Assembly (NCBI RefSeq): GCF_964204865.1
Contig: NC_135258.1
Span: forward strand, 10,478,001 to 10,542,000
Length of the DNA: 64,000 bases
From: Styela clava
Taxonomy: Eukaryota
Direction: 5' to 3'
In this document: positions 46,801-61,800 of the stretch, in pieces
Position numbering within the stretch: position 1 is the stretch's first letter
How the letters are laid out: the number at the start of each line of letters is the position of its first letter
Translations under genes and position numbers: made by a program
The notes under the pieces: generated by a model
What the model saw: only the letters and a program-made list of their open reading frames with translations
The model's database searches: none
Told to the model about the DNA's origin: nothing

Positions 46801-49800
46801 CGCTTTACTAAATCTATTTTGTTGTTACTTATTGTGTAACTTGTGAGTTTGCCTAAATCTGTTTGCGTTTGTCTATGAGTTCTGCTTTGATGCTTGCTTT
46901 GTGTAAATATGAGTAATATAACATCTCGTGCATCGTGCCCATTTAATTGGTTTAGTGTAATTTTCTTTGCTTATCTTTTAAATGTGGACTTCTGTTTTTG
47001 TTAATACTAATGTTGTGGTTCGTCATGTTTTTTTTTGAAAAATAATGTATACTATATATAATATGTAGCTTATTGCATTAGTGCGATAGTATATATATAT
47101 ATATATTGTATCATGAACCAATTTTCTCTTTTCAAAATAACTCATCGATATAAGATTTTGCTAAATTAACATATTATTTCGATAACATTTATAGTTCAAT
47201 ATAATCACGATCACACACAAGCAATGTCATAAAAATATTCACCTGTAACTATGATGTTTACTTTTTGAGATAGAAATTGGATAATCACTATTATGACCTG
47301 ATGTTCAGTGATAGCCGAATTCTATTATTAATTTTCCTATTTTTATGTTTTCAGCTCCAGTACAGGAAACCGATCCATGCAAAGGTGTCATCTGTGGTAA
47401 TATGGCAAAATGTGTTGTAGTGGATGGTATGGGAAAATGCCAATGCCATTCTTGTGACAATGCAATGACCAAGCCAGTATGTGGTTCTGACCAAAAATCT
47501 TACCGCTCAGAATGTGACTTGAGACGGGCTGCATGCGAACATTCCCAGAGTCTAAAAGTCCTCAGACGAGCACCATGTGGTAAGTTTTAGATAATTTGAC
47601 AACCTACATGACTTTAGTCAATTGGAATTTTATGCCAGTGCAATTTCTTGTAATTTTAAACCAATATTGTTGTGATTTCTCATCGATAACATTCAACATC
47701 ATTGTCATATCTCAATGATTTGCCCAAATTTCATTGTCAAGTTCAGCACCTGAAATTATAGACACTGTGTAAAACAATTATTTATTTTGCTTTATATGAT
47801 TCTGTTGTTTGATTTGAGTGATACATTAATAAAATTCAATGCCTTAGGAACAGTATTTTTGGTTAGTGTTTGCATGCCCACATCTTATTCTGCTTTTTTC
47901 TAATATTTGCCTAAATGAAATTATCTTTATTTATCACCGGATGAAATAAAATTGGACTAAATTTGCTGAGGAGGTGTTTGCAATCATTTTGAATCTTTAA
48001 CTTTATTATGTCAGTATGAAATTATTTTGTTATTGGTGCTTATAGAATTGGTAGTGTTCAAATTTTCAATCGAATGGTTGAATGAAAATAAATAATTCCC
48101 ACACAGTTATATTAGGACAAATTACAAGGAGTTGGGTGGGTTTGCTCCAAGATAAGAATCATTTCCGGTGTATGTACCATGATATCCCATTAAGAGTCAT
48201 AATCACAATAAATTAGTAATTTGCACTTGAGGGCTCTTGACTTTCCTTTTGTTTGCAAGATGTCTGCATCGTATCTCAAAATATGTTTGATAATACACTT
48301 TAAGAGTTAGTGGTATAGTCTGTTATGTTGCACATTATCTTTTTCGCAATTCCAAGATGCTTGAAGTCTATGTTGGCAAACATTATCTGTTTACCATGCA
48401 TACAAAATTATAACTTGGTACATTTTGTTCTCTTGTATTTCCTCCTCAGTGGGCAAAATATAAAATGCTTACGATATTAAATATCCATTATTATGCCTAG
48501 TATCTATGGGTATAACGACTAATATTTATTTATCTTGTTTTGTATGTTACTTGCTGTATTTGCAGTCATTTAGTAAATGGTAATAATATCATTGTATCAC
48601 CTATCAATTGCTGGACTCCTCTTCATCGTAGTGTGGTTCACGTAACCGCTGGTCAGTTAGCAGCGTCCACTCCTCCATTCGTCCATGCATCTGAAACAAA
48701 TATTTGGTTAACTAATCCCATACTTGACATGGGCTGGTAACCATACCAGAGGCCATGGCTTGCTATATGGTTAAGCCATCTTATCGGCTTTCCTTTTCCC
48801 CGAGATAAATATGTAATTCCTATTATATCATAATACATTTATGTTTATGCAATTTGATCAGAGGAATATAAAATGTTACGTAGAACCAAATCGAACTTAC
48901 AACTTGTCTTTAAAAACATGATTTGCTGGTTTAGATCCATGCGAAGTTTACAATGAAAAAAACAAATCATTTGAGCCTTTATGTGAGGGATCATGCAGTT
49001 TGGATGTTGAAGGAAATCCTCAATGCTGTGATTCAATTGAATGTGAACCATCTAGTGAAGAAATGATGGTGTGTGGAAGTGATGGAAGAACATACATGTC
49101 GAAATGTGCATTACAAAAATATTCTTGTAAAATTGGAAGAGATATATCACAAGTATCTTTGGGTTCTTGTCCATCTCCAAGAGGTAAGTGAATAGTCTGA
49201 TGAAAAAGCAAGTAATTTTGTTTGTTTGTAGGATCGGTTCGTCACGGCAAAATTTCAGCCAATTCTGCATTTTTTTCATGTGCATTGTGTCAATGACTAA
49301 AAAGACAAAATTAATTTTAAGATGAAGGTTTATATTTTGTCCATAAATTTTTGCATAAGACTCAGTTAAACATTACATATAAAAAATTGGCATCTGTCTT
49401 ATTCTCATTTGAAGCACAACAAATGAACAATGAAAGTTTTTCGAATTGTTCTTGACAGAACAAAAGTGGCTTTGTTGTGGTTTTTATGATGGTTGTCTAA
49501 ATACAGCTTCTATTTGCTTTATGAACATAAGCAAATGCCAAAGCATTATCATAAAAGATATCTTGTAAGATATCATTGTCGTTTAAGTGATATATTGTTT
49601 ACACATACAGCAGTATAGTAAAACATCACTATCCCATGAACATTTGGTTGAAAATTGATCTTGCAAAGATCTTCCAATGTTTTCAATATCTATCTATATA
49701 GTTAATATTTCATTGACAAAACTTATTACCAACTCTTACACAAAGCTTGCGATTATGTGATATAATGTTAGAATTATGAATAACATCTAAATTTACATGA

Positions 49801-52800
49801 ATTTACAGAAACAACAATTGTACAAGGCAGCACGAGCATCGCAGCAGATGAAAAATGTCCAGGTAATTGTGATGAATCCTCTCCAGACTTTATTGCTTTC
49901 AAAAGCTCTTTCGAAGAAAATGTCAACAAGGTAATTTGTATAAATATAAATGTGAATCTATTTTCATCTGCTATTGTTATATATATATAAATAAATGTTT
50001 GAAACAAAGATATTGGATTTGGTTTGAACATATTTTCATAAATGATAGGTATTTCATAAAGTCTCTTCAGGTTAATATAGAAATGAAACTTATGCCATTT
50101 GAAACTGCCATTTATCATTAATTATTTCCTTCAGTCTGTCTTATCTAAATTTTCTCGCATTAATAACTCACTGACTTCCTGAACTAATATTTTTGGCAGC
50201 GAACTATGACCTTGAGTTTGAGATAATCACTTTAATCTGACTCGCATGGTGTGTGTGGTCTATAAAGTTCAGAATGTGTTGCAGTGTTCAAATGTGAAAA
50301 AGCACTTACGATTCAGAACATAAAAAATTATGCATTTTTATGAAATTTTCAAATATCAATATTTCCTTATGTAAGAAAAAATATTGGAAATCGTATTCAA
50401 TCATTTTGAATATCCATTTGCTGAAGTGGTTTATCCGGCAATTTAATATATTGAAATATTTTGTTGAAGTAATGTTTATGATGTCCTTAAGTATTTGACA
50501 AAAAATATTTATGAATAATATTTTGGGATTGTTTCATTTTATTAATATTCAGAAAAATACTTATATGCGCAGTTTATATAAAATTGTCATTCATTAAGAG
50601 AAACCTGGATTGATACTGTATGTTTTATCCTATCTTCTATTATTTGCATGTCTTTATTGTATATTTTGTATATCTAAATTTCTTATTCATTTCCAGATTC
50701 TCGAAAGGAAGAACAAAGCTAATAGTGATGCAGGATCTGTAACAAATTTTAAAATTGAGGAAGTAAGAAGAGGTAGTGCTGTTTTAGTTTACAGGTTTGT
50801 TAAATTATATTTTCCACTCGATTTTTTGAACCCAGCTTACAAAATCCAGACATTCCTTCGCATTTACGATAAACGAATTAAGCATTCTTTTGAGTTTATG
50901 ACAAGGTTTAGGCTTACCGTATTACTTCCGATATAAGATATTGATGGTTTATTTGGAAATACATCCTTCATTGTTTTCACGATACAAAATCAGCACATTG
51001 CTGTATATGTTTAGGTGCCTCAGGGCACTGATTTTCTTCCATAATAGTGTTGAGGAAGTTAATATCGTTGCTATTGTGGAAAATATCTGATTGGTGATTA
51101 AGTTGGATGATACCCAACCGGATTTATTGCTAAGCTTAACCTTTGATGGCCATACACCCAATTTGTTGTGTATCCTTAGGCACATTAGTTGCCAAATATG
51201 TTTTATGTTAGCATAACACAATTTTTTGTCTGCATTTTTGTGTTATGGTGATTATATACAAATTTGGCATATTTTGATTCTCCAACTATGTAACTGTTTT
51301 AATTCAAATGATCATGATTTTTTTACCATTTGTGCTGTAATTGACATAAATTCAAGGAAAATGATTTAGTGTTTATTTATTATGTATATGTAATTTGTAT
51401 ATACATATATGTACTTGTATGTATATGTACAAAAATTTGCGTCTTTTAATGTAGTGCTATGATGACTTGGTCTGATATGCCCATCGGTGAAGATTTTGTT
51501 CCTGGTCTTGATACATTGTGGGCATTTGAAAGATTGCATGATCCTGCAGTAGGAGCATTGAAAGAGGCAATTATTTCCATGCATGTTACTTTGGTCTTGT
51601 ACAAGAAACCTGGGGATGATTTTATGGTTCAAGGTAATAATTGTTATATAACTAATTATTGCCATTCCTAAATGTAAAATTTTTAACTTCGAATCAGTTT
51701 TGTATTTTTCACCATTGAGAAGCTTTTTAGAAACATCAAGCTGAAGGTTTATCTTTCAATTATTAGGATTAGGTAAAAATGTTTTATTTAGCATTCATTA
51801 ATTACACAATATTTCTCTCACAATGGAAATAAATATCTGAATCGTAATCTGAAGCTGTGGATATGATTATTTGAAACATCGGACAATTATATTAACAGCT
51901 TCAGATTATGATTCAGATTACGACACATATATATATATATATATATGTTTAAAAATAAAACCCAATTGAACAAGTCAAGTTTATGCATCAAAAACAAATA
52001 CCTGGTTAGCTATTCTAATATGCAACGTCATTGAATGGTAACAGGATGATGGCCACATTTACCATCTGATTAAGCCATCCCATTTTTTCATGTGAATAAA
52101 CCATTTTGTCTACTTTCATCTCCCCCAGCATAAAAATGAAAATCCTATCCATATCCTAATTGAATATATAATTCAGAGGTTTGTGGAATGCTACAATGTG
52201 AGCATGGTGCAAGTTGTATGGTGACAGAAGACAATGCTGGAGGTCTGGAACACAGTTGTGACTGTTCCGCTATTGGCAACGCTGAGCGTCTTCCTGTCAC
52301 ACTTGGATGCAAACTAGCAAACAACAACCGCTTTTATGATAACAAGGTCGCGGTACGTCAAGCGTCTTGCATGTTGAGGTCTTTCTTCACATTCAGAGAC
52401 ATTTGTCGAGGTATCATCGCTCTTTTAATATCTTGTATTTTGTATAAATATGTTAGGATTATTGTTTGTTTTTTTAACCAAAAACTTTTTTTTGTGCTTT
52501 ATTATTTAAAATCTTTTTATAAAAAAGGTAAGTTATATCTGTTACTTAGTTATTGGATGTTTACTTCTCTTATTGTTGTTCTGAAATATTGTGGCTTTTG
52601 CTGAATTGCTGTTTAATGGTAAATGGTTGAATGTTGATGCATTTGATGTATAATGTGAACGCATGTGTATTCTGTGTTGTATCATGCACATATAAAACGA
52701 ATATTTATAAATACTTTTGTATCACACAAGTTCCACCTAAAAATCCGTGTGATGACATTTCATGTGATGGAGATGGAAGTATGTGTATTATTACTAATGG

Positions 52801-55800
52801 AGTAGCAAGCTGTGACTGCGTAACATGCTCTGAAACATTTGAACCTGTCTGTGGATCAAACGAACAGACTTACAGGTAAGTTACTGATAATTTTTCTAAG
52901 CCATTTTCATTACCTAACTTGATAATATGATTAATTCTTTCAATACTGCATTATTAATTTCCACTCATAGGTAATTTCAATTCATTGTATGGTAAAACTT
53001 TTGTAATGTTATAGCATATTTTCTATATTTACAACAGGAGCATGTGTCACTTAAATAGGGAGAACTGCATTCGTGGAACATCTGTAACTGTGGCAAGCAA
53101 TGGAATGTGTGGTTAGTATGCTCTTTATAAATATTTACTTGTTAACAGAACTTATTTTTATTTTTACATCTATGGTAATCTGAATAAACTAATATTATTG
53201 GAAACTGATGTGGAGTGATTCATTTCATATCACAATCAATCATCATCAACCATTGGCTCAGTCATAAATTTGTGTTTCTACCTTAATTTCAGCAAGTCAA
53301 TGTGATGAAGTTGATTGCAGACATGGAGGACAATGTGAGGAATTATTGAGAGGGTCTGCATTGTGTATTTGCCCATCATCGGTTAGTGTTTTGTCATTTT
53401 ACATTAACATGGCATGGGGTTTTTGGAAATCAATCTGAGTGATGATAAAGGATAATATATAGTTTTGGTTTATGGCGGAGTTCTAGGTTTGATAATACTT
53501 ACAATATCAATTTAAATATATTTTATAAAATGCTAATTTAGCAAATACATGTATCTGTTCAATATAATAATTAAATATAACATTTTATTATAAAAACATT
53601 CATATACAACTGACAAAATAATGATGAATATCTTTCTTTCATTTTTTCCTAGTGTATTGAAGTGTATTCACCAGTATGTGGATCGGATGGTATAACATAT
53701 GAAAATGAATGTCGACTTTCAATTGCTGCTTGCAATAAGAAGATGGACATATCTGTTCTGAAGATGATGCCTTGCAGTGAGTACTTTTTGTGGGGTACCG
53801 GTAATATAAATAGAATAAAACCACACAATCGTTTTTACATATAAATCTTGGATATGATAGATGTTGTTTTATTTATTTTTCATGTCAGTTGTTTGTTATA
53901 TTATACATTTTGTTATGAAAAAAATTTCTTAGATGGTACTGAAAGTATAAAACCTCCTACTGAGGAAGTGGAGGAAGGATCTGGAGAAGAGGGATCTGGG
54001 GAAGATGACTGTCATTGTAAATTTGGAGCAACCTGTGATGAAACTATTGATGATGAAGATAGAAGTTGCGTTTGTGATATTAAATGTGACAGGTAATATA
54101 ATTGATCAGTTATTTGTATTTTTCATGTCACAATAACTTTATATTTCTTAGTACCTACTTGTTCAAAGATATGATATATGCGAGGTACAAATAAAAGAAC
54201 ATTGATGTTTTGCAATATTATTTTTCTCCCTCTTGATTTTTATGTATATTTTTCAAAAGGAATCTAGTTTTAATGGACTGCTTTCAAACTTTAGAATCGG
54301 ATCATGGGTATGCGGATCCGATGGAAAAACTTATACTGATGAATGTGAATTGCTCAAAACACAATGTGAAATGCAAAAATTAATCAAAATTGCATCACAA
54401 GGAAGATGTGCGGGTATGTGAATATTGTATTGCAAAAAATATGTAGAAAGACGTGGCAAAAAAATTATGGAGGGTTTTGAAATTTTCATTAAAAAAATTA
54501 CAATTCGACACCATTCTCATTATTAGAACTATACTATGGTTTGAAAGTAATAATAATATACTTCATTTCTGTTTTTGTTTTGTTAGACTTATGCTCAAAA
54601 TCTGTATTTGGTTGTTGTGATGATGGAATTACTCCTGCGAAAGGAAGCAGAAAGGCTGGTTGTCCAGGTATATGTTTAAACATAATTCCATCTGTGGGTG
54701 TGGCTTTATCAGCTTCTATAACTTTTTTCTAATAAAATTTATTTACTTCTGTTATGCTGTCTTTAATCTATCATCGATGCATATTTGAGTTTCCATAATA
54801 AATTATATTTGAAATGGCACAATTCCACAAAATCTTTTTAACTTCAAACCGACCGTTATGTTATATATATGACCTTGTCGCTATATTGCAACCCAGCAAC
54901 CCACATGTTTTGTTTATACAAGCTCTTTTTCAGTGATCGTTATGGTTGGCTAAGTGTAGGGGTCATTAAGCCTTGTTTTTATGTTATCAAATTCCCAGGT
55001 GTTACTAGAAGGCGTTAGAACTTATTTTGATAAATTATGGGTGATTTACAATTTGAATATAGGTTACTAGTTTGCACATGGCTTGATTAATTGTGGTTCT
55101 GTGTGAGGCGCTGAAATTTTTGGTGCCATGTAATATTAATTTGTATTTTTATATCATTTCACTTTACAAGCGAACCCATTCATTCCAATGTCAATATTTC
55201 AATATATTGTTTTATCCACAAATAAAATGGTTTTATCCGTATTAATAATCATCAATCATTATTTGGAATCCTTCAGCATGATCGAAATAAAAAAATCACA
55301 TATAAAATCAGGAAAATTTTTATAAATTTGCATTGACATTTTAAAGTCAACTTTATAGATGGTACTGAATAAATCTTCCTAAAAACATGGATATTTTATA
55401 TGTTCAAATGAGTTGGAGTACTTTTTAGTTCTGGTACTACACTCTGTTTTTTAAATAATTTATTTTCTTTATCTAACAGAAACATGCAAGTGCAACGAAC
55501 ATGGTTCATTTTCTCCACTCTGTAATCACACAACAGGGCAATGTGTATGTAGACCAGGAGTTGGAGGTCAGAAATGTGATCAATGCCAACCAGGATTCTG
55601 GAATTTCCGTGCCATTGCGGAAAAGCGAAGCATTGGATGCATGGGTAAGATAATTGTATAAAAGATTGAATACCATAAAATATAGTTTAAGCTAGGCCTT
55701 TTCAATATAATGGAGCCATTTTATTGGGATTACTTCATCCACTAAGATTAAGGTGAAATACTAACATAAGCGATAATTCTGCATAATAACTATTTAATGA

Positions 55801-58800
55801 AATATTTTCTTTTGAAAAAGTTGCAAATTCAAGTACTAAGCAGAAATTTTATGTAATGGTTGCTACATGCAGTGTTTCATAAACCCCTCTTAGAAATGGT
55901 GTTGGGGATCATTTCCTCGCCTTTTTCAAATCTTGAGATGAATCATATGTCACATTTTTGTCCACAATCATCTTTAGATTGTAGATGTGAAAAGGGAGGC
56001 TCAGTTCGAGACGATTGTGATCAAATGACAGGACAATGTGTTTGCAAAGAAGGAATTACAGGAGTTAAATGTTCAAAATGTGAAAATGGGGAATTAGTCA
56101 CCGACGAAGGATGTGTAGGAGGTAAAATAGAATATCTTTGTTTTTTGAACTTCTTAAAATTAAGAGTAAGGAAATGTTCAGCTTTTTTATTCATGATTCA
56201 TGTATGTAGTGACTACTTCTATAACTTTTATGCAAATTTCAGCCCATGGAAGAGAAACCGCTGGTTCCTGTGGAGAATTAAATTGCCGTTTTGGCCAAGA
56301 ATGTGTTGCTCGATCTGCTGAATCAGGATTATACATGTGTCAATGTCCCCCATTATCTTCCTGTGATACATATGCTAATGGCAAGGTTAGTTAACTATTT
56401 ATGTGCATTCTCATTTGATATATATTTGACATCACTATTTGCGTGACGTTCAAAAGTTTTTTGAAATCGTGGAAATGTTATATATCCTACAATATATGCT
56501 CGACAGTGTTTCAATTTTATACCATCATCCATATTCTTGTTTTATTAACAGTACTTTTGTAATTATCAATTCTTCATTTTTGGTTATTACTTGTTTCACG
56601 TATCTTGTTTATTGCTTAATGTTGCCAGCTTCCAAAATACTAGCTCAATTGATTCAAATGTCCAATGTTTAATATTCGTGCTTATTGCTTGCTTTCTATT
56701 ATTACGGTACTTTGTTTAGCCTTTTACAGTGATGCATTACACTAATCACTCTTTATTTCTTGTTCCTTGCCTCTCTCGCAGTGTATTAAACGTAAAAAGG
56801 CAAGTGTTGTGTGATATAGTTGTTGTCTGTTGTCAAACACAAATGCATGTCTTGATTAGTCTACTTGATAATAATATTGCTAGTGCCACCAATTTTAAAC
56901 TGAAGATGAAACACTTAAACTAACTCCTTTTCCATCCTTATGTATCTGTGTAGAGTGTTTGTTGTAGCATGTTGTTACTATAGTGATTCCCAAGGTTACA
57001 ATAGACATGTAGCCTGGAACATGTAAACACATCACACTTAATTATAGTTTTTACATAATCTCTCAAACAAAAAACAACTTGTTTTCCACAATTTACTAAA
57101 ATGATAAAAATATTATCTTCTTTATGACTGTATTTGGAATTAGTACACAAGGTAATGGGTTTCAGTTAAGCATGTGGTAGAGCTCGGATGAGTATTTATA
57201 CTGTTTATTCATACGAAATTACCTCATTATTTTTCTTTGCTATGCATATGGTATACTGGAATTGATAACATTGACAAATTGGTTGCTACTGACTTTATGC
57301 AAATTTAAAATATGCACCTAAAATAGCAATTAACGTAGTAGATATTTAACATAGGAACCCAAATTATATATCAGTATTCTCTGTGTCATATCAAAAGAAA
57401 AATTTGTGAAAGCACTCGATTTAAAAATTCCCTTTTTCACCTAACCAACAAACGTCATTTACTAATATCAATCTTCATAATATTCTGCACTTATCTCTTA
57501 ATCAAATTACGAATTCCTATGGAAGCAGAACAATGAACCCACGCTGTGACTCTTATAACGATTGAGTACCCTTCATTGTCAAACCCAAATGGTGATGTAT
57601 TTGAGATGTTTTGTTATACATGGCCCAAGAAAGCCGAAGCTGGATTTGGCCGTGATCATCTTAGACGTGTTTCACAGAAAAAAGTTTGTGGCTAAATCGT
57701 AGCCTCAAATGGGCTTCTCGCAGGATTTGTTTTATTTTGATAAAATTCGTGATTTTCTTTAAACCCAAAATTCATTTAATATGAAGCATAGTATCACATG
57801 CTGTGAGCCTGTGACTAATATCCAGCAGTATGCTGTTATTAAATCAAAATGTTTAAAATGAATTTTTCACTACTTATTGTGAATTTATTATGTACTATAA
57901 AAATAATTCATTGAATTAAAATCCATTGGAATTCCTGGAAAATTGTTTACGCATATAGTCAAATAAAATTTATATTTTTTTTCAGGTTATGTATACTATA
58001 ATTTCTAACCTTTTTTATATTTTTTTTAGATTTGTGCATCAAATGGAATAACATATGCTGATGAATGTCAAATGGTAGTAGTAGCATGCAGAGAATCAAT
58101 TGTTCTTACCGTTATCTCTGATGGAACATGTAGCGGTATGAAAATAAATTGTATACAATTTCTCAAATAGCACTGCTCTGTTTCCGACACATTTTATTGC
58201 AAAATATGTATTCTTTTATAGAAATCAATAATTTAGTAATAATATATTTATATATTCTGACAAAGTATTTTGGAATGCTAGAATATGATTTATAATATCA
58301 TGAATACGTTCCATCATTTAATTTTGACTTCCATATTTTTTGTTGTTAAGTAAAAAGTTATAAATCTTTATGTAATATTTTGCCAACAAAATATCATTCT
58401 ATTTTGTTTAGAATATTTCAAATCAAAAAGGCCTGTGGTTCCACCTATTGTTACACCCGCATCCACAACGGCTCAACCTGCTACTACCACTACTACATCC
58501 ACCGCTAGTACAACTATGTCTACTACTACTGCTTCCACCACTTCAAAATCAACTACAACTAGCTTGACTACCCCAGGTATAAGCACAGATATGAATAAAG
58601 TAACTGATTCAACGACAACAATCACTACTACAATGACATCAACAATGGCCGTGAAAACACCAGATCCTGACTTCGATATTGGTATGTGATTTATTTATCT
58701 ATATAGCACATTATACAACTTTTGATACCCCACTCACAGACCACTTTTTTATGCAATGCTGTCAGAAATCTATCCTAACATCTAACTTTTAAGGTAACAA

Positions 58801-61800
58801 TAATTGACTTTGTCTGCACTTTTCATATATGCAAACATGTCAGTTAGCTAAGTAGAAATTTCTAATTATCCCAATTAAAAATCCAAATACACATATTCAT
58901 TTCGACTTAAAATCCTGACTTGTTAACTGGTATTTATAAACATAAATAAAACTTGATTGATAGGCACCATTTTTATTCTTAAAAATAAAAAGATGCAATC
59001 ATATTTCATAATATTTCAATCGCCGCAAATATTACTAACAGAAGTTTCTCTCTTCACCTGATCACTTGATTAAAAATACCAATTGTAAATTTTTTATTTC
59101 AGATGGCAGTGGTGATGGTGGTGAAAATACTGATGGTAATACTACAATTGATGATGAAGATGATAATGAAAATGAATCTTCCGGAGATGAAACTGATGAT
59201 GTCAGTTTAATATAATTTCTGTTAACCATGAATATTACAAAAAATCTTGAAGTTATTCTAGTCTTATATCTATATTGAATATTTATGAAATTAGTTGTTC
59301 GTGTATTTTACTTGAACTATCTATGTTCTTGTTAATTTGGTTTTTCTGTACCAAGTCATTCAAAATTTTGATTTGCGTGTTGCTTATGCAATTGAATTTT
59401 CATGTCTGAATGAAATAATATTATTATTTTAGATTTTCCCCACTGGTCATACAGACGCTCATAATCTGGTGACACCAGGTATGAACAATTTTGTTTTTGA
59501 TTTGTTAAACTGATAAAGTGACAGTTCTACTGATGACATTTTTGATGTGATTTTCTCATTGTGAACATATTGTCAAATTACCTTTTAATGATTATATAAA
59601 ACACATTTTTGAATCGTGACTCATGGCAGTGAGAGAAATATGATATATCTTGTGAAAAATACAGGATAATCTTTCTGTACGAAACATTTATAAAAGATCA
59701 GATTTAGAATTTTATATAGGTACAGATTCAACAGTTTAAAAATATTCTTCTTTTTTTTTAAGCAGCCTTATTGCAGCAAATGGAAATCAGTGTTTCAAAT
59801 TTATGTCTATATGTAATATTTGTTTCGTAGATGTCATGTAACTAACTATACAATGTAAAATGTCAAATACAATGTCATTTGGCTAGTTTGATATTGGGGG
59901 TGCATATTGTCCATATCTGCATGAGTGTGAATATGTATTTTTTACCAGTTTCCTTTATTTATCTTTCCTACATAAGAATATTTTTATTATATTAGTAAAA
60001 AGTTTTATTAAATGCAGTTAGTTTTATTTTATGGTATTTTTATAGAATCAATGCGATCATATCAAGTAGAAACGAAGTTGAAATTTCCTAACAATACAGA
60101 ACCAATAAACATGGATGATTTGTTGAAAGATCCTGAAGAATATGGGGAAACAATTACATCAGTCTTCACTAGGGTAAGTTACTAACTAGCACATACATTA
60201 TGTTTAGTTTAATAGAAAAATGATAACATTTTTAGTGTTCACTCGTGATTTGGGGTCTCTTCTATTCCAGGCTATTATAATAAAATATATAAACTATGTG
60301 ATGATTGCCTTTCTACTTTTTTCTATTACTATATATTTCAACTTGATTGACTTTTTTTGGTTCATATGAGGTGGTGTGTTATTCTAATCTTGTTATCTTT
60401 AGTATCGACTTGAGCTAATGCGTAATCCACTTAAAACCATTTTCTAGATTTATTTTTGACACTTAATCAATTTCCTACTTGTTACAGCTTGGTCTTGTTA
60501 TTGCGGGATTGCCAGGAAGCAGTCCAATAGCACTCACATCTTTGACAAATGCTGCCATAAAACAAATAAATACTGAAGGTATCGTTGTCACATTCCAAAT
60601 TGATGTTTCTGACAAATCTGACCTGAAAGAACTGCAAAATTTTATAAATGCAAATCTGGATGACGGTGAAAGTTTTATGTTCATTGATTCAGGTATACAA
60701 TAAAAGACATATTCATGCAAATTTTTCATTATCATCAAACACAATTAATTTTAGCTTTGGTAAGGAAAGAGACTTCCACAAAGACAATAATAAAACAGAT
60801 TAAGAATGAATTTTGTATTTTATTTGATTGTATATATTTCTCATGAATGGTTTTTTAACCAAATGAGTTATTTTCAAATTCATTTGTAGCATAAACACAC
60901 CATGATATGGTATAGCATTCAATATTTTTTCTCCTGATGGTGTCATTTGTACAGCCATGTGTATGTGTTATCTATTTTTGAGTACTTCGGTAATAATCCT
61001 CGATGATGATTACATTTTTTTGAGTCAGAATTCTATTTATTAAAAACGACACAAGCTGAAGTAGCAAGAAAAGCGAAATATATTTCTATATATATTCGTA
61101 TTTTATACTTTAATCATATATGAAAACATATAAATATGTGCTCAAATATATTTTAAATCTATTTTTATCAATGGTTTATAATATAATAGTTCTTCTATTA
61201 AAATAATTCCAGTTCAGCTTCATCTTTTACACTGCTCAAGAAGATTTTATGTTTCCTGGCACTTAACTGAAGTGTAATTAATTCTTTATTAATTTGTGCC
61301 AATGTTTAAATAGATTGTTTTCAAATTACACTTTATTAATTATTGCATTATTCAAAAATTAATTTTATTGTGCCTTAATTTTATTGTAATTTATCAATAT
61401 CATTGTTTTATCTTAATTCCCATGTGTAGTATGAAAATTAAACCAATTATTTTGAATGATTTTTGCATTTGTCATTATGAAACAATGTTACAATATGTGA
61501 TAAACATTAGAAAAAATTGCTTCGTTATGTGTGACGTAGAAATGTTCTGTGTTGATGTAATCTTTATGAAATGTGGCAACATTGCATGGTGGATATTTGA
61601 AGCAATCATATTGCCCTTTAATTTTGCATAAAACACAATATTCAATTTTATCAAATATGAAGAATGATGCTCATCAAATAAATGATGAATATTATTAATG
61701 AGGAGCACATGAAAAATTTGTAATTAAACATGATTGCTTCAATTTACCTGAAATTATTGCTGAATCAAATCCTAACCTTCCTTCTTTTCTTCTTGTCCCT

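What the first reader, a model, noticed from the sequence alone, without database searches (positions are those of the whole stretch)
49809..51633. Agrin with an extra, potentially self-cleaving SEA module inside the follistatin array
Seen: three in-phase exons (399 nt, overall phase 1-1, so skippable as a block) lie between FS3 and FS4 and encode ...[22 protein letters not shown]...FKIEEVRRG^SAVLVYSAMM... Known: vertebrate agrin has one SEA, located after the Ser/Thr region, and SEA domains of MUC1-type mucins autoproteolyse at G^SVVV with the halves staying non-covalently bound. The canonical-position SEA here (60046-60692) reads TEGIVVTF with no G-S, so only the extra module carries the motif (codons 50772-50777). 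Inference: a lineage-specific agrin whose laminin-anchored NtA-FS1-3 part could detach from the heparan-sulfate/LG signalling part, i.e. a built-in release point, possibly switchable by splicing. A competing phase-1 donor CCAG|GTAATT at 49862 could also bypass the module.
Basis: partly seen in the sequence, partly recalled or inferred. Interest (0 to 1): 0.8.

Follow-up and report, generated by a model that had tools for sequence, protein, structure and literature searches.

The report
Extra SEA-like module in sea-squirt agrin
A sea squirt's agrin gene carries, inside its follistatin-repeat array, a 133-residue module, present in every RNA assembly examined, that resembles a SEA domain and keeps a Gly-Ser where some SEA domains cut themselves; Ciona agrin has the same module (printed in 2010 as an "unassigned region"), and neither the fold nor any cleavage has been shown.

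Summary
Three exons (49809-49930, 50697-50794, 51455-51633; 399 nt, phase 1-1) lie between a Kazal/FS exon and a degenerate FS-like exon of an agrin gene. Spliced RNA contigs from four runs in three studies carry all four predicted GT..AG junctions. No skipped form and no use of the 49862 donor appeared, although contigs hide rare isoforms.

The module is single-copy in this genome. It is not private to this species. Four unnamed database fragments share exon C at 42-65% identity. The Ciona intestinalis agrin printed by Banyai et al. 2010 has the same module at the same place, gap-free, about 35% identical by hand count, with ..EVR.GSA.L.. conserved. That paper lists the stretch as unassigned by Pfam. 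Sea urchin and insect agrins in the same table show no such gap.

SEA identity is suggested, not proven. Exon by exon, Pfam SEA finds nothing, but it also misses the canonical agrin SEA exons. A profile of this genome's own SEA exons aligns colinearly with exon A (P about 0.002) and exon B (P about 0.03, Gly-Ser on Gly-Ser). Exon C shows no SEA signal. The motif reads GSAVL, not the canonical GSxxV.

Self-cleavage remains a hypothesis.

The parts
48935..49183 (+). FS3 exon (follistatin/Kazal module), phase 1-1, directly upstream of the insert
   Evidence: Kazal_2 E 2.8e-11. The spliced contigs join 49183 to 49809.
49809..49930 (+). Module exon A (122 nt, phase 1 to 0): ..[18 protein letters not shown].. 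followed by the predicted SEA helix 1 (..[18 protein letters not shown])
   Evidence: Translation; RNA joints. hhalign to this genome's SEA profile: SEA columns 19-36 on residues 21-38, P 0.0021. 0 of 400 shuffles reach that score, and 6 of 2000 do with HMMER. Single copy in the genome.
50697..50794 (+). Module exon B (98 nt, phase 0 to 2): loop, predicted strand 2, Gly-Ser turn and start of strand 3 (..[15 protein letters not shown])
   Evidence: Translation; RNA joints. hhalign places SEA columns 46-61 on residues 15-30 with GS on GS, P 0.028. 12 of 400 shuffles reach that score. Single copy.
50772..50777 (+). Gly-Ser codons, the candidate autoproteolytic site (G|SAVL)
   Evidence: Aligned with the invariant Gly-Ser of eight SEA exons of the same genome. 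Conserved as ..RQGSAILLF.. in Ciona agrin.
51455..51633 (+). Module exon C (179 nt, phase 2 to 1): C-terminal half with the conserved PI..PG..WA..RLHDP..G...V...DDF pattern
   Evidence: Translation; RNA joints. Relatives P0002, P0003, P0004 and P0006 are 42-65% identical. Single copy. No SEA or PDB signal.
49862..49863 (+). In-phase donor-like site CCAG|GTAATT inside exon A; no evidence of use
   Evidence: Sequence. No contig joint starts here. All four RNA assemblies read G instead of A at 49861, a synonymous CCA>CCG change.
52177..52410 (+). Degenerate FS-like exon downstream (..[13 protein letters not shown]..), phase 1-1
   Evidence: Translation; no Kazal hit; joint 51633>52177. The matching Ciona stretch also falls in the Pfam-unassigned region 431-677.
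60046..60173 (+). First exon of the canonical-position SEA (phase 1 to 0)
   Evidence: No Pfam SEA hit when scanned as a single exon.
60488..60692 (+). Second exon of the canonical-position SEA (phase 0 to 1), ..[13 protein letters not shown].. without Gly-Ser at the hairpin
   Evidence: Ciona and vertebrate agrin SEA domains likewise lack Gly-Ser there (Fig S6 of PMC2874008).

Best explanation
The three exons encode a 133-residue extracellular module of ascidian agrin. All RNA assemblies examined include it. It was inserted at a phase-1 intron between FS3 and the next FS-like unit. It is most likely a divergent SEA-type domain: strand 1 and a small CPGNC loop, then helix 1 (..SPDF..F....FE..V.KIL), strand 2, a Gly-Ser turn, strand 3 (SAVLVY..), then a lineage-specific C-terminal half. 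Shown here: the exons, their splicing, their single-copy status, their conservation in other species including Ciona, and colinear profile similarity of the first two exons to genuine SEA exons. Inferred: the fold itself. Also inferred is the leading functional idea, that the strained Gly-Ser hairpin self-cleaves by an N-to-O acyl shift, as in MUC1. That would leave NtA-FS1-3 held to the rest of agrin only non-covalently, so the two parts could separate under force. My odds: about 0.65 for a SEA-like fold, and about one in two for cleavage given that fold, so about one in three overall.
For: All four junctions appear in spliced contigs of 4 runs from 3 studies. Exons A, B and C each occur once in the genome. 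Exon C has relatives in four unnamed Logan/ENA fragments with 16 invariant positions. Ciona intestinalis agrin carries the same module at the same place with no indels. The blocks ..ADE.CPGNCD....EVR.GSA.L....GALK.. and ..DDF.. are conserved, and identity is about 35% by my hand count. Eight SEA exons of this genome (three above Pfam's cut-off for PF01390, the other five E 0.004-0.11) all show ..F.NGSV[IV]... Their profile aligns with exon A on helix 1 (P 0.0021; 0 of 400 shuffles) and with exon B on strand 2, Gly-Ser and strand 3 (P 0.028; 12 of 400 shuffles). The two matches are colinear and adjacent. The module is phase 1-1 with a phase-0 intron 40 codons in, like the canonical SEA of the same gene, which is 1-1 with a phase-0 intron 42 codons in. 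SEA autoproteolysis is driven by strain in the scissile hairpin (PMC10556640).
Against: No Pfam SEA hit for any of the three exons at E up to 10. Exon C has no similarity to PDB chains or to a small profile of SEA C-terminal halves. AlphaFold on exon C alone gave pLDDT 57 and two helices, which is uninformative. With HMMER, exon B alone is not significant (285 of 2000 shuffles). The motif GSAVL departs from GSxxV with x = V or I. Unlike most SEA domains, the module is not next to a Ser/Thr-rich stretch. There is no BLASTP similarity to the gene's own canonical SEA. The authors of PMC2874008 state that their consensus procedure was applied to Pfam-unassigned regions over 100 residues; their verified architecture assigns no domain to this stretch.
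Confidence: 0.6

Rival explanations
1. The module has a SEA-like fold but does not cleave. It acts as a rigid spacer or a binding surface inside the FS array, and Gly-Ser is kept only because the tight turn needs it.
For: GSAVL (Ciona GSAIL) departs from the published autoproteolytic GSxxV, x = V or I. Many SEA domains, including the canonical agrin SEA, lack the cleavage dipeptide. Nothing here shows two fragments.
Against: Gly-Ser-Ala sits in the best-conserved block of a module that is otherwise only about 35% identical between Ciona and this species. The following residues are a hydrophobic strand, as in cleaving SEA domains. Cleavage depends mainly on hairpin strain, not on exact flanking residues.
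Confidence: 0.33
2. The module is not a SEA domain at all. It is an ascidian-specific module of another or unknown fold, and its resemblance to SEA helix 1 and the Gly-Ser hairpin is chance or convergence.
For: No Pfam, PDB or profile hit for exon C, which is nearly half of the module. Its most conserved C-terminal motif, WA..RLHDP, was not seen in the four SEA C-terminal halves of this genome that I aligned. Banyai et al. list the Ciona stretch as unassigned by Pfam. The profile evidence rests on short alignments of 16-18 columns with P of 0.002 and 0.03.
Against: Two independent exon matches fall in the right order and spacing on the SEA profile, with GS on GS. The length from Gly-Ser to the module's end, about 66 residues, fits a SEA C-terminal half. 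The exon-intron layout resembles that of the gene's canonical SEA. Exon-wise Pfam also misses that canonical SEA, so the negative result carries little weight.
Confidence: 0.3
3. The block is a regulated cassette, skipped as a whole or bypassed through the 49862 donor, so agrin with and without the module coexist.
For: The block is symmetric (phase 1-1), and the internal CCAG|GTAATT is in phase with the acceptor at 52177.
Against: All spliced contigs in four runs of three studies include all three exons. No joint 49183>52177 or 49862>52177 was reported. The RNA allele at 49861 is G, which weakens that donor's match to consensus. Phase 1-1 symmetry is the rule for shuffled extracellular modules and does not by itself imply skipping.
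Confidence: 0.1

Closest known systems
Autoproteolytic SEA domains of the MUC1 type (MUC1, MUC3/12/17, IMPG2 SEA-2, dystroglycan's SEA-like module)
   Same: Helix-1 pattern, then a strand, a Gly-Ser turn and a hydrophobic strand in the same order and spacing as in this genome's SEA exons. Size is about 130 residues. It is an extracellular phase 1-1 module.
   Different: The motif is GSAVL, not GS[VI][VI]V. No Pfam-level match exon by exon. The C-terminal half carries its own conserved motif. It is flanked by follistatin modules, not by mucin-like Ser/Thr stretches or a membrane anchor. Cleavage is untested.
The canonical agrin SEA domain (after the Ser/Thr region; window 60046-60692)
   Same: Same gene. 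Both are phase 1-1 modules with a phase-0 intron 40-42 codons in. Both are too divergent for Pfam when scanned exon by exon.
   Different: No detectable sequence similarity between the two. The canonical one lacks Gly-Ser at the hairpin in this species, Ciona and vertebrates. It lies at a different place in the protein and has no third exon.
Ciona intestinalis agrin XP_002123658.1, 'region unassigned by Pfam 431-677' (Banyai et al. 2010, PMC2874008, Table S1)
   Same: Same position (after the third Kazal domain, before ..C..LQCEHGA.C..), same length without indels, and shared blocks ..ADE.CPGNCD....EVR.GSA.L....GALK....DDF... This is the orthologous module.
   Different: Only about 35% identical (hand count). 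The WA..RLHDP motif of the present species and of the four fragments reads WIYDRLYSD in Ciona. The paper gives it no domain name or function.
Neurotrypsin cleavage of vertebrate agrin (alpha and beta sites)
   Same: If the module self-cleaves, both would split agrin into an N-terminal matrix-bound part and a C-terminal signalling part.
   Different: [quoted passage not shown] Its alpha site has no equivalent region in invertebrate agrins (PMC2874008), and the vertebrate FS array has no insert by my background knowledge. SEA halves stay associated until pulled apart.

Membership tests
Agrin | NtA domain, array of follistatin/Kazal modules, two laminin-EGF modules, SEA after a Ser/Thr-rich stretch, laminin-G modules, all on one strand in that order | tested here: met
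   Pfam on single exons: NtA 3.2e-05, Kazal_2 down to 1.3e-11, EGF_laminin 3.1e-15 and 1e-08, Laminin_G_1 1.1e-07. Ser/Thr-rich exon at 58354-58686 and SEA-like exons at 60046-60692. Flanks of the module match the Ciona agrin printed in PMC2874008.
SEA domain (Pfam PF01390) | Match to the family profile above its curated cut-off | tested here: inconclusive
No hit for exons A, B or C at E up to 10, and none in the genome-wide six-frame scan. The same exon-wise test also misses the gene's canonical SEA, so it lacks power.
SEA domain (Pfam PF01390) | Colinear similarity to accepted SEA sequences over helix 1 and the strand 2 - turn - strand 3 hairpin | tested here: met
   Profile of eight SEA exons of the same genome against exon A: P 0.0021, 0 of 400 shuffles. 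Against exon B: P 0.028, 12 of 400 shuffles, GS on GS. The two matches are in order and adjacent. The evidence is weak to moderate, on short alignments.
SEA domain (Pfam PF01390) | Beta-alpha-beta-beta-alpha-beta (ferredoxin-like) fold | not tested
   A fold of the spliced module is a joined step and was left out. AlphaFold on exon C alone gave pLDDT 57, which is unusable.
SEA domain (Pfam PF01390) | Similarity of the C-terminal half (helix 2, strand 4) to SEA | tested here: not met
   The exon C profile against PDB gave nothing relevant. Against four SEA C-terminal halves of this genome, P was 0.27, no better than column shuffles. SEA C-terminal halves are poorly conserved, so this is a weak negative.
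Autoproteolytic SEA subgroup | Gly-Ser at the strand 2 / strand 3 turn | tested here: met
   G-S at codons 50772-50777 aligns with the invariant G-S of the genome's SEA exons and is conserved in Ciona. Whether it lies in a hairpin depends on the untested fold.
Autoproteolytic SEA subgroup | Full motif GSxxV with x = V or I (PMC9478142) | tested here: not met
   The module reads GSAVL, and Ciona reads GSAIL. These are conservative hydrophobic replacements whose effect on cleavage is unknown.
Autoproteolytic SEA subgroup | Demonstrated cleavage into two fragments that stay associated | not testable with these tools
   This needs protein expression and a Ser-to-Ala control.

The most novel reading that the evidence does not exclude
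Ascidian agrin contains a self-cleaving SEA domain inside its follistatin array. The laminin-bound NtA-FS1-3 head would then be tied to the heparan-sulfate, laminin-G signalling body only by a non-covalent, force-sensitive joint. This would be a built-in release point, conserved from Ciona to stolidobranch ascidians. It would do autonomously what neurotrypsin cleavage does to vertebrate agrin.
Probability: 0.3. Interest if true: 0.7.

Novelty: new variant of a known kind. Interest (0 to 1): 0.45.

Why it matters
Agrin organises the neuromuscular junction, and Ciona is now an experimental model for agrin splicing and acetylcholine-receptor clustering (PMC12445529). In vertebrates, fragments of agrin are released by neurotrypsin. 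Both the protease and its sites are absent from invertebrates (PMC2874008).

A conserved, possibly self-cleaving SEA-type module in the N-terminal half of ascidian agrin would give tunicates a different, protease-independent way to uncouple the matrix anchor from the signalling part. It would also add a secreted matrix proteoglycan to the mostly membrane-tethered proteins that use SEA autoproteolysis as a mechanical fuse.

Even if it does not cleave, the result assigns a probable domain type to part of a stretch of Ciona agrin that was listed as unassigned by Pfam in 2010. It also shows that the insert is shared by the two ascidians compared here and is missing from the sea urchin, insect and nematode agrins tabulated there.

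Tried and rejected
1. Pfam on each exon: no SEA hit. The canonical SEA exons also fail, so this test is uninformative.
2. PF01390 six-frame scan of the whole genome: 20 hits, none in the window.
3. Full phmmer of exon C against 1.84 billion representatives: three real but short unnamed fragments. Two other hits (P0001, P0005) are repetitive artefacts. No full-length protein was hit.
4. Word search with the exon C alignment: one more fragment, P0006. Word search with exon B plus flanks: no candidate.
The cluster look-up gave no names.
6. The protein atlas was closed or did not hold the sequences.
7. JGI metagenome scan: nothing.
8. PDB sequence searches with the exon C profile, exon A and exon B: nothing relevant.
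9. AlphaFold on exon C alone: low confidence.
10. Exon C against SEA C-terminal halves: no signal.
11. Insert against canonical SEA by BLASTP: no similarity, so a recent internal duplication is not supported.
12. Paralogues of the three exons in the genome: none.
13. Literature search for agrins with two SEA domains: none found in the held library.

Left out by rule: any search or fold of the joined exons, and typing the Ciona sequence from the paper into any tool or script. I compared it by eye only.

Full report
**What is there**

On the + strand, three exons lie between two Cys-rich exons of an agrin-like gene. They are A 49809-49930 (122 nt), B 50697-50794 (98 nt) and C 51455-51633 (179 nt). 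All borders are AG/GT. The phases run 1-0, 0-2 and 2-1, so the 399-nt block is symmetric (phase 1-1).

The upstream exon 48935-49183 is a Kazal_2 domain (E 2.8e-11). The downstream exon 52177-52410 is FS-like by its cysteines but gets no Kazal hit.

Other exons of the same strand give NtA, several Kazal, two laminin-EGF and laminin-G hits. A Ser/Thr-rich exon and two SEA-like exons at 60046-60173 and 60488-60692 follow.

Earlier notes of this scan name the genome Styela clava. I did not verify the species. The close match to Ciona agrin described below shows that it is an ascidian.

**Expression**

Four runs from three studies were laid on 48900-52450 as Logan contigs. Each holds one long spliced contig that carries the joints 49183>49809, 49930>50697, 50794>51455 and 51633>52177, all GT..AG. 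The record labels these runs as RNA only by guess, but spliced contigs can only come from RNA.

No contig skips the block, and none uses the in-phase donor CCAG|GTAATT at 49862. Contigs drop rare variants, so minor isoforms are not excluded. There is simply no evidence for a splicing switch.

**Distribution**

Each of the three exons occurs once in the 377-Mb genome.

A full phmmer of exon C against 1.84 billion representative proteins found three true relatives. All are short unnamed ORF fragments from Logan or ENA contigs. It also returned two repetitive artefacts. A word search added a fourth fragment.

The four fragments are 42-65% identical to exon C and share 16 invariant positions: PI..PG..WA..RLHDP..G...V...DDF.

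**The Ciona match**

The decisive comparison came from the literature. Table S1 of Banyai et al. 2010 (PMC2874008) prints Ciona intestinalis agrin, XP_002123658.1. After its third Kazal domain and before ..DLQCEHGAMC.., that protein has a stretch that lines up with the present module without a single indel.

The shared blocks are ..SI.ADE.CPGNCD....EVR.GSA.L....GALK.. and ..DDF... By my hand count, 46 of 133 positions are identical.

The paper lists residues 431-677 as "region unassigned by Pfam". It recognises only one SEA, at the canonical place (E 0.0017), and counts seven FS domains.

In the same table, the Kazal coordinates listed for the sea urchin and beetle agrins are regularly spaced, with no such gap, and the architectures given for the nematode and bee agrins show uninterrupted FS runs. 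By background knowledge, vertebrate agrins have none either.

The insert is therefore present in both ascidians compared (by background knowledge, representatives of two different ascidian orders), and its sequence has been public for years. I found no paper that calls it a domain.

**Is it a SEA domain?**

I therefore left out the Pfam scan, profile search and structure prediction of the joined 133 residues. I also did not type the Ciona letters into any tool.

Exon by exon, Pfam gives nothing. It also gives nothing for the two exons of the canonical agrin SEA, so this negative carries little weight.

As a sharper test, I took the genome's own SEA exons found with PF01390 and aligned eight of them. 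All eight end ..F.NGSV[IV].. just before a phase-2 intron. I then compared that profile with each exon:

| Exon | SEA profile columns | Exon residues | hhalign P | hhalign shuffles reaching score | HMMER shuffles reaching score |
|---|---|---|---|---|---|
| A | 19-36 (helix 1) | 21-38 | 0.0021 | 0 of 400 | 6 of 2000 |
| B | 46-61 (strand 2, Gly-Ser, strand 3) | 15-30 | 0.028 | 12 of 400 | 285 of 2000 |

In the exon B alignment, Gly-Ser falls on Gly-Ser. The two matches are in the right order and adjacent. The canonical agrin SEA exons do not align with this profile at all.

Exon C shows no similarity to PDB chains or to four SEA C-terminal halves. AlphaFold on exon C alone was of low confidence.

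One structural hint remains. The insert and the canonical SEA are both phase 1-1 modules with a phase-0 intron 40 and 42 codons in. They share no detectable sequence, however.

I put a SEA-like fold at about 0.65.

**Would it cleave?**

Published autoproteolytic SEA domains carry GSxxV with x = V or I (PMC9478142). Cleavage is driven mainly by strain in the scissile hairpin (PMC10556640).

The module has GSAVL and Ciona has GSAIL. Gly-Ser-Ala therefore lies in the best-conserved block of a module that is otherwise about 35% identical, but positions +2 and +5 are not canonical.

Conservation argues for a constraint on this turn. It does not show chemistry. Given a SEA fold, I rate cleavage as roughly even, which is about one in three overall.

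The proposed consequence is a non-covalent, force-sensitive joint between the laminin-binding NtA-FS1-3 head and the rest of agrin. This is inference only. It is an interesting parallel to neurotrypsin processing of vertebrate agrin, which invertebrates lack.

**Verdict**

- SEA-like: probably.
- "Carries the motif": only Gly-Ser is exact.
- "Lineage-specific": yes, but at the level of ascidians rather than this species, and the sequence was already in print as an unassigned region.
- "Switchable by splicing": no evidence.

I class it as a new variant of a known kind: agrin with a second, SEA-like module inside the FS array. Interest is moderate and would rise if fold and cleavage are confirmed.

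Noticed in passing
window 49861: All four RNA assemblies (three studies) read G where the genome has A. The change is synonymous (CCA>CCG, Pro) and lies two bases before the donor-like GT at 49863. It is most likely a polymorphism of the sequenced individual, since nearby intronic contigs also differ at three places. A-to-G is also the signature of RNA editing, and I could not lay a DNA run to tell them apart.
   Followed up: no
window 52177-52410: The FS-like exon after the module (..[13 protein letters not shown].. with 8 Cys) gets no Kazal hit. Its Ciona counterpart also lies in the Pfam-unassigned region. It looks like a degenerate follistatin module that travels with the insert.
   Followed up: partly
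window 54493-54729: This exon encodes ..[21 protein letters not shown].. and has no Pfam hit. The same GCC.DG.T.A.G...GCP motif stands before the laminin-EGF pair in the Ciona and sea urchin agrins printed in PMC2874008. It appears to be a small conserved unit without a family name in this scan.
   Followed up: no
L012 = G000:C9:102500-112499, minus strand (outside the window): A mucin-like gene has long Ser/Thr-rich exons alternating with two-exon SEA domains. The first exons end ..GF.NGSVIV before a phase-2 intron. These are canonical GS[VI][VI]V sites, probably self-cleaving. Similar SEA exons lie on contig C8.
   Followed up: partly
P0001 and P0005 (hits): The two hits scored over many repeated stretches (17 and 9) in the exon C search are perfect tandem-repeat translations (1196 and 755 aa) with many weak summed matches. 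They are artefacts, not relatives.
   Followed up: yes
window 49809-49930, N-terminal block: A second conserved Gly-Ser stands at the start of the module (..VQGSTSI.., Ciona ..VRGSLSI..), followed by an invariant ADE.CPGNCD with the module's only two cysteines. This may be a small disulfide loop between strand 1 and helix 1. It has no counterpart in the genome's other SEA exons.
   Followed up: no
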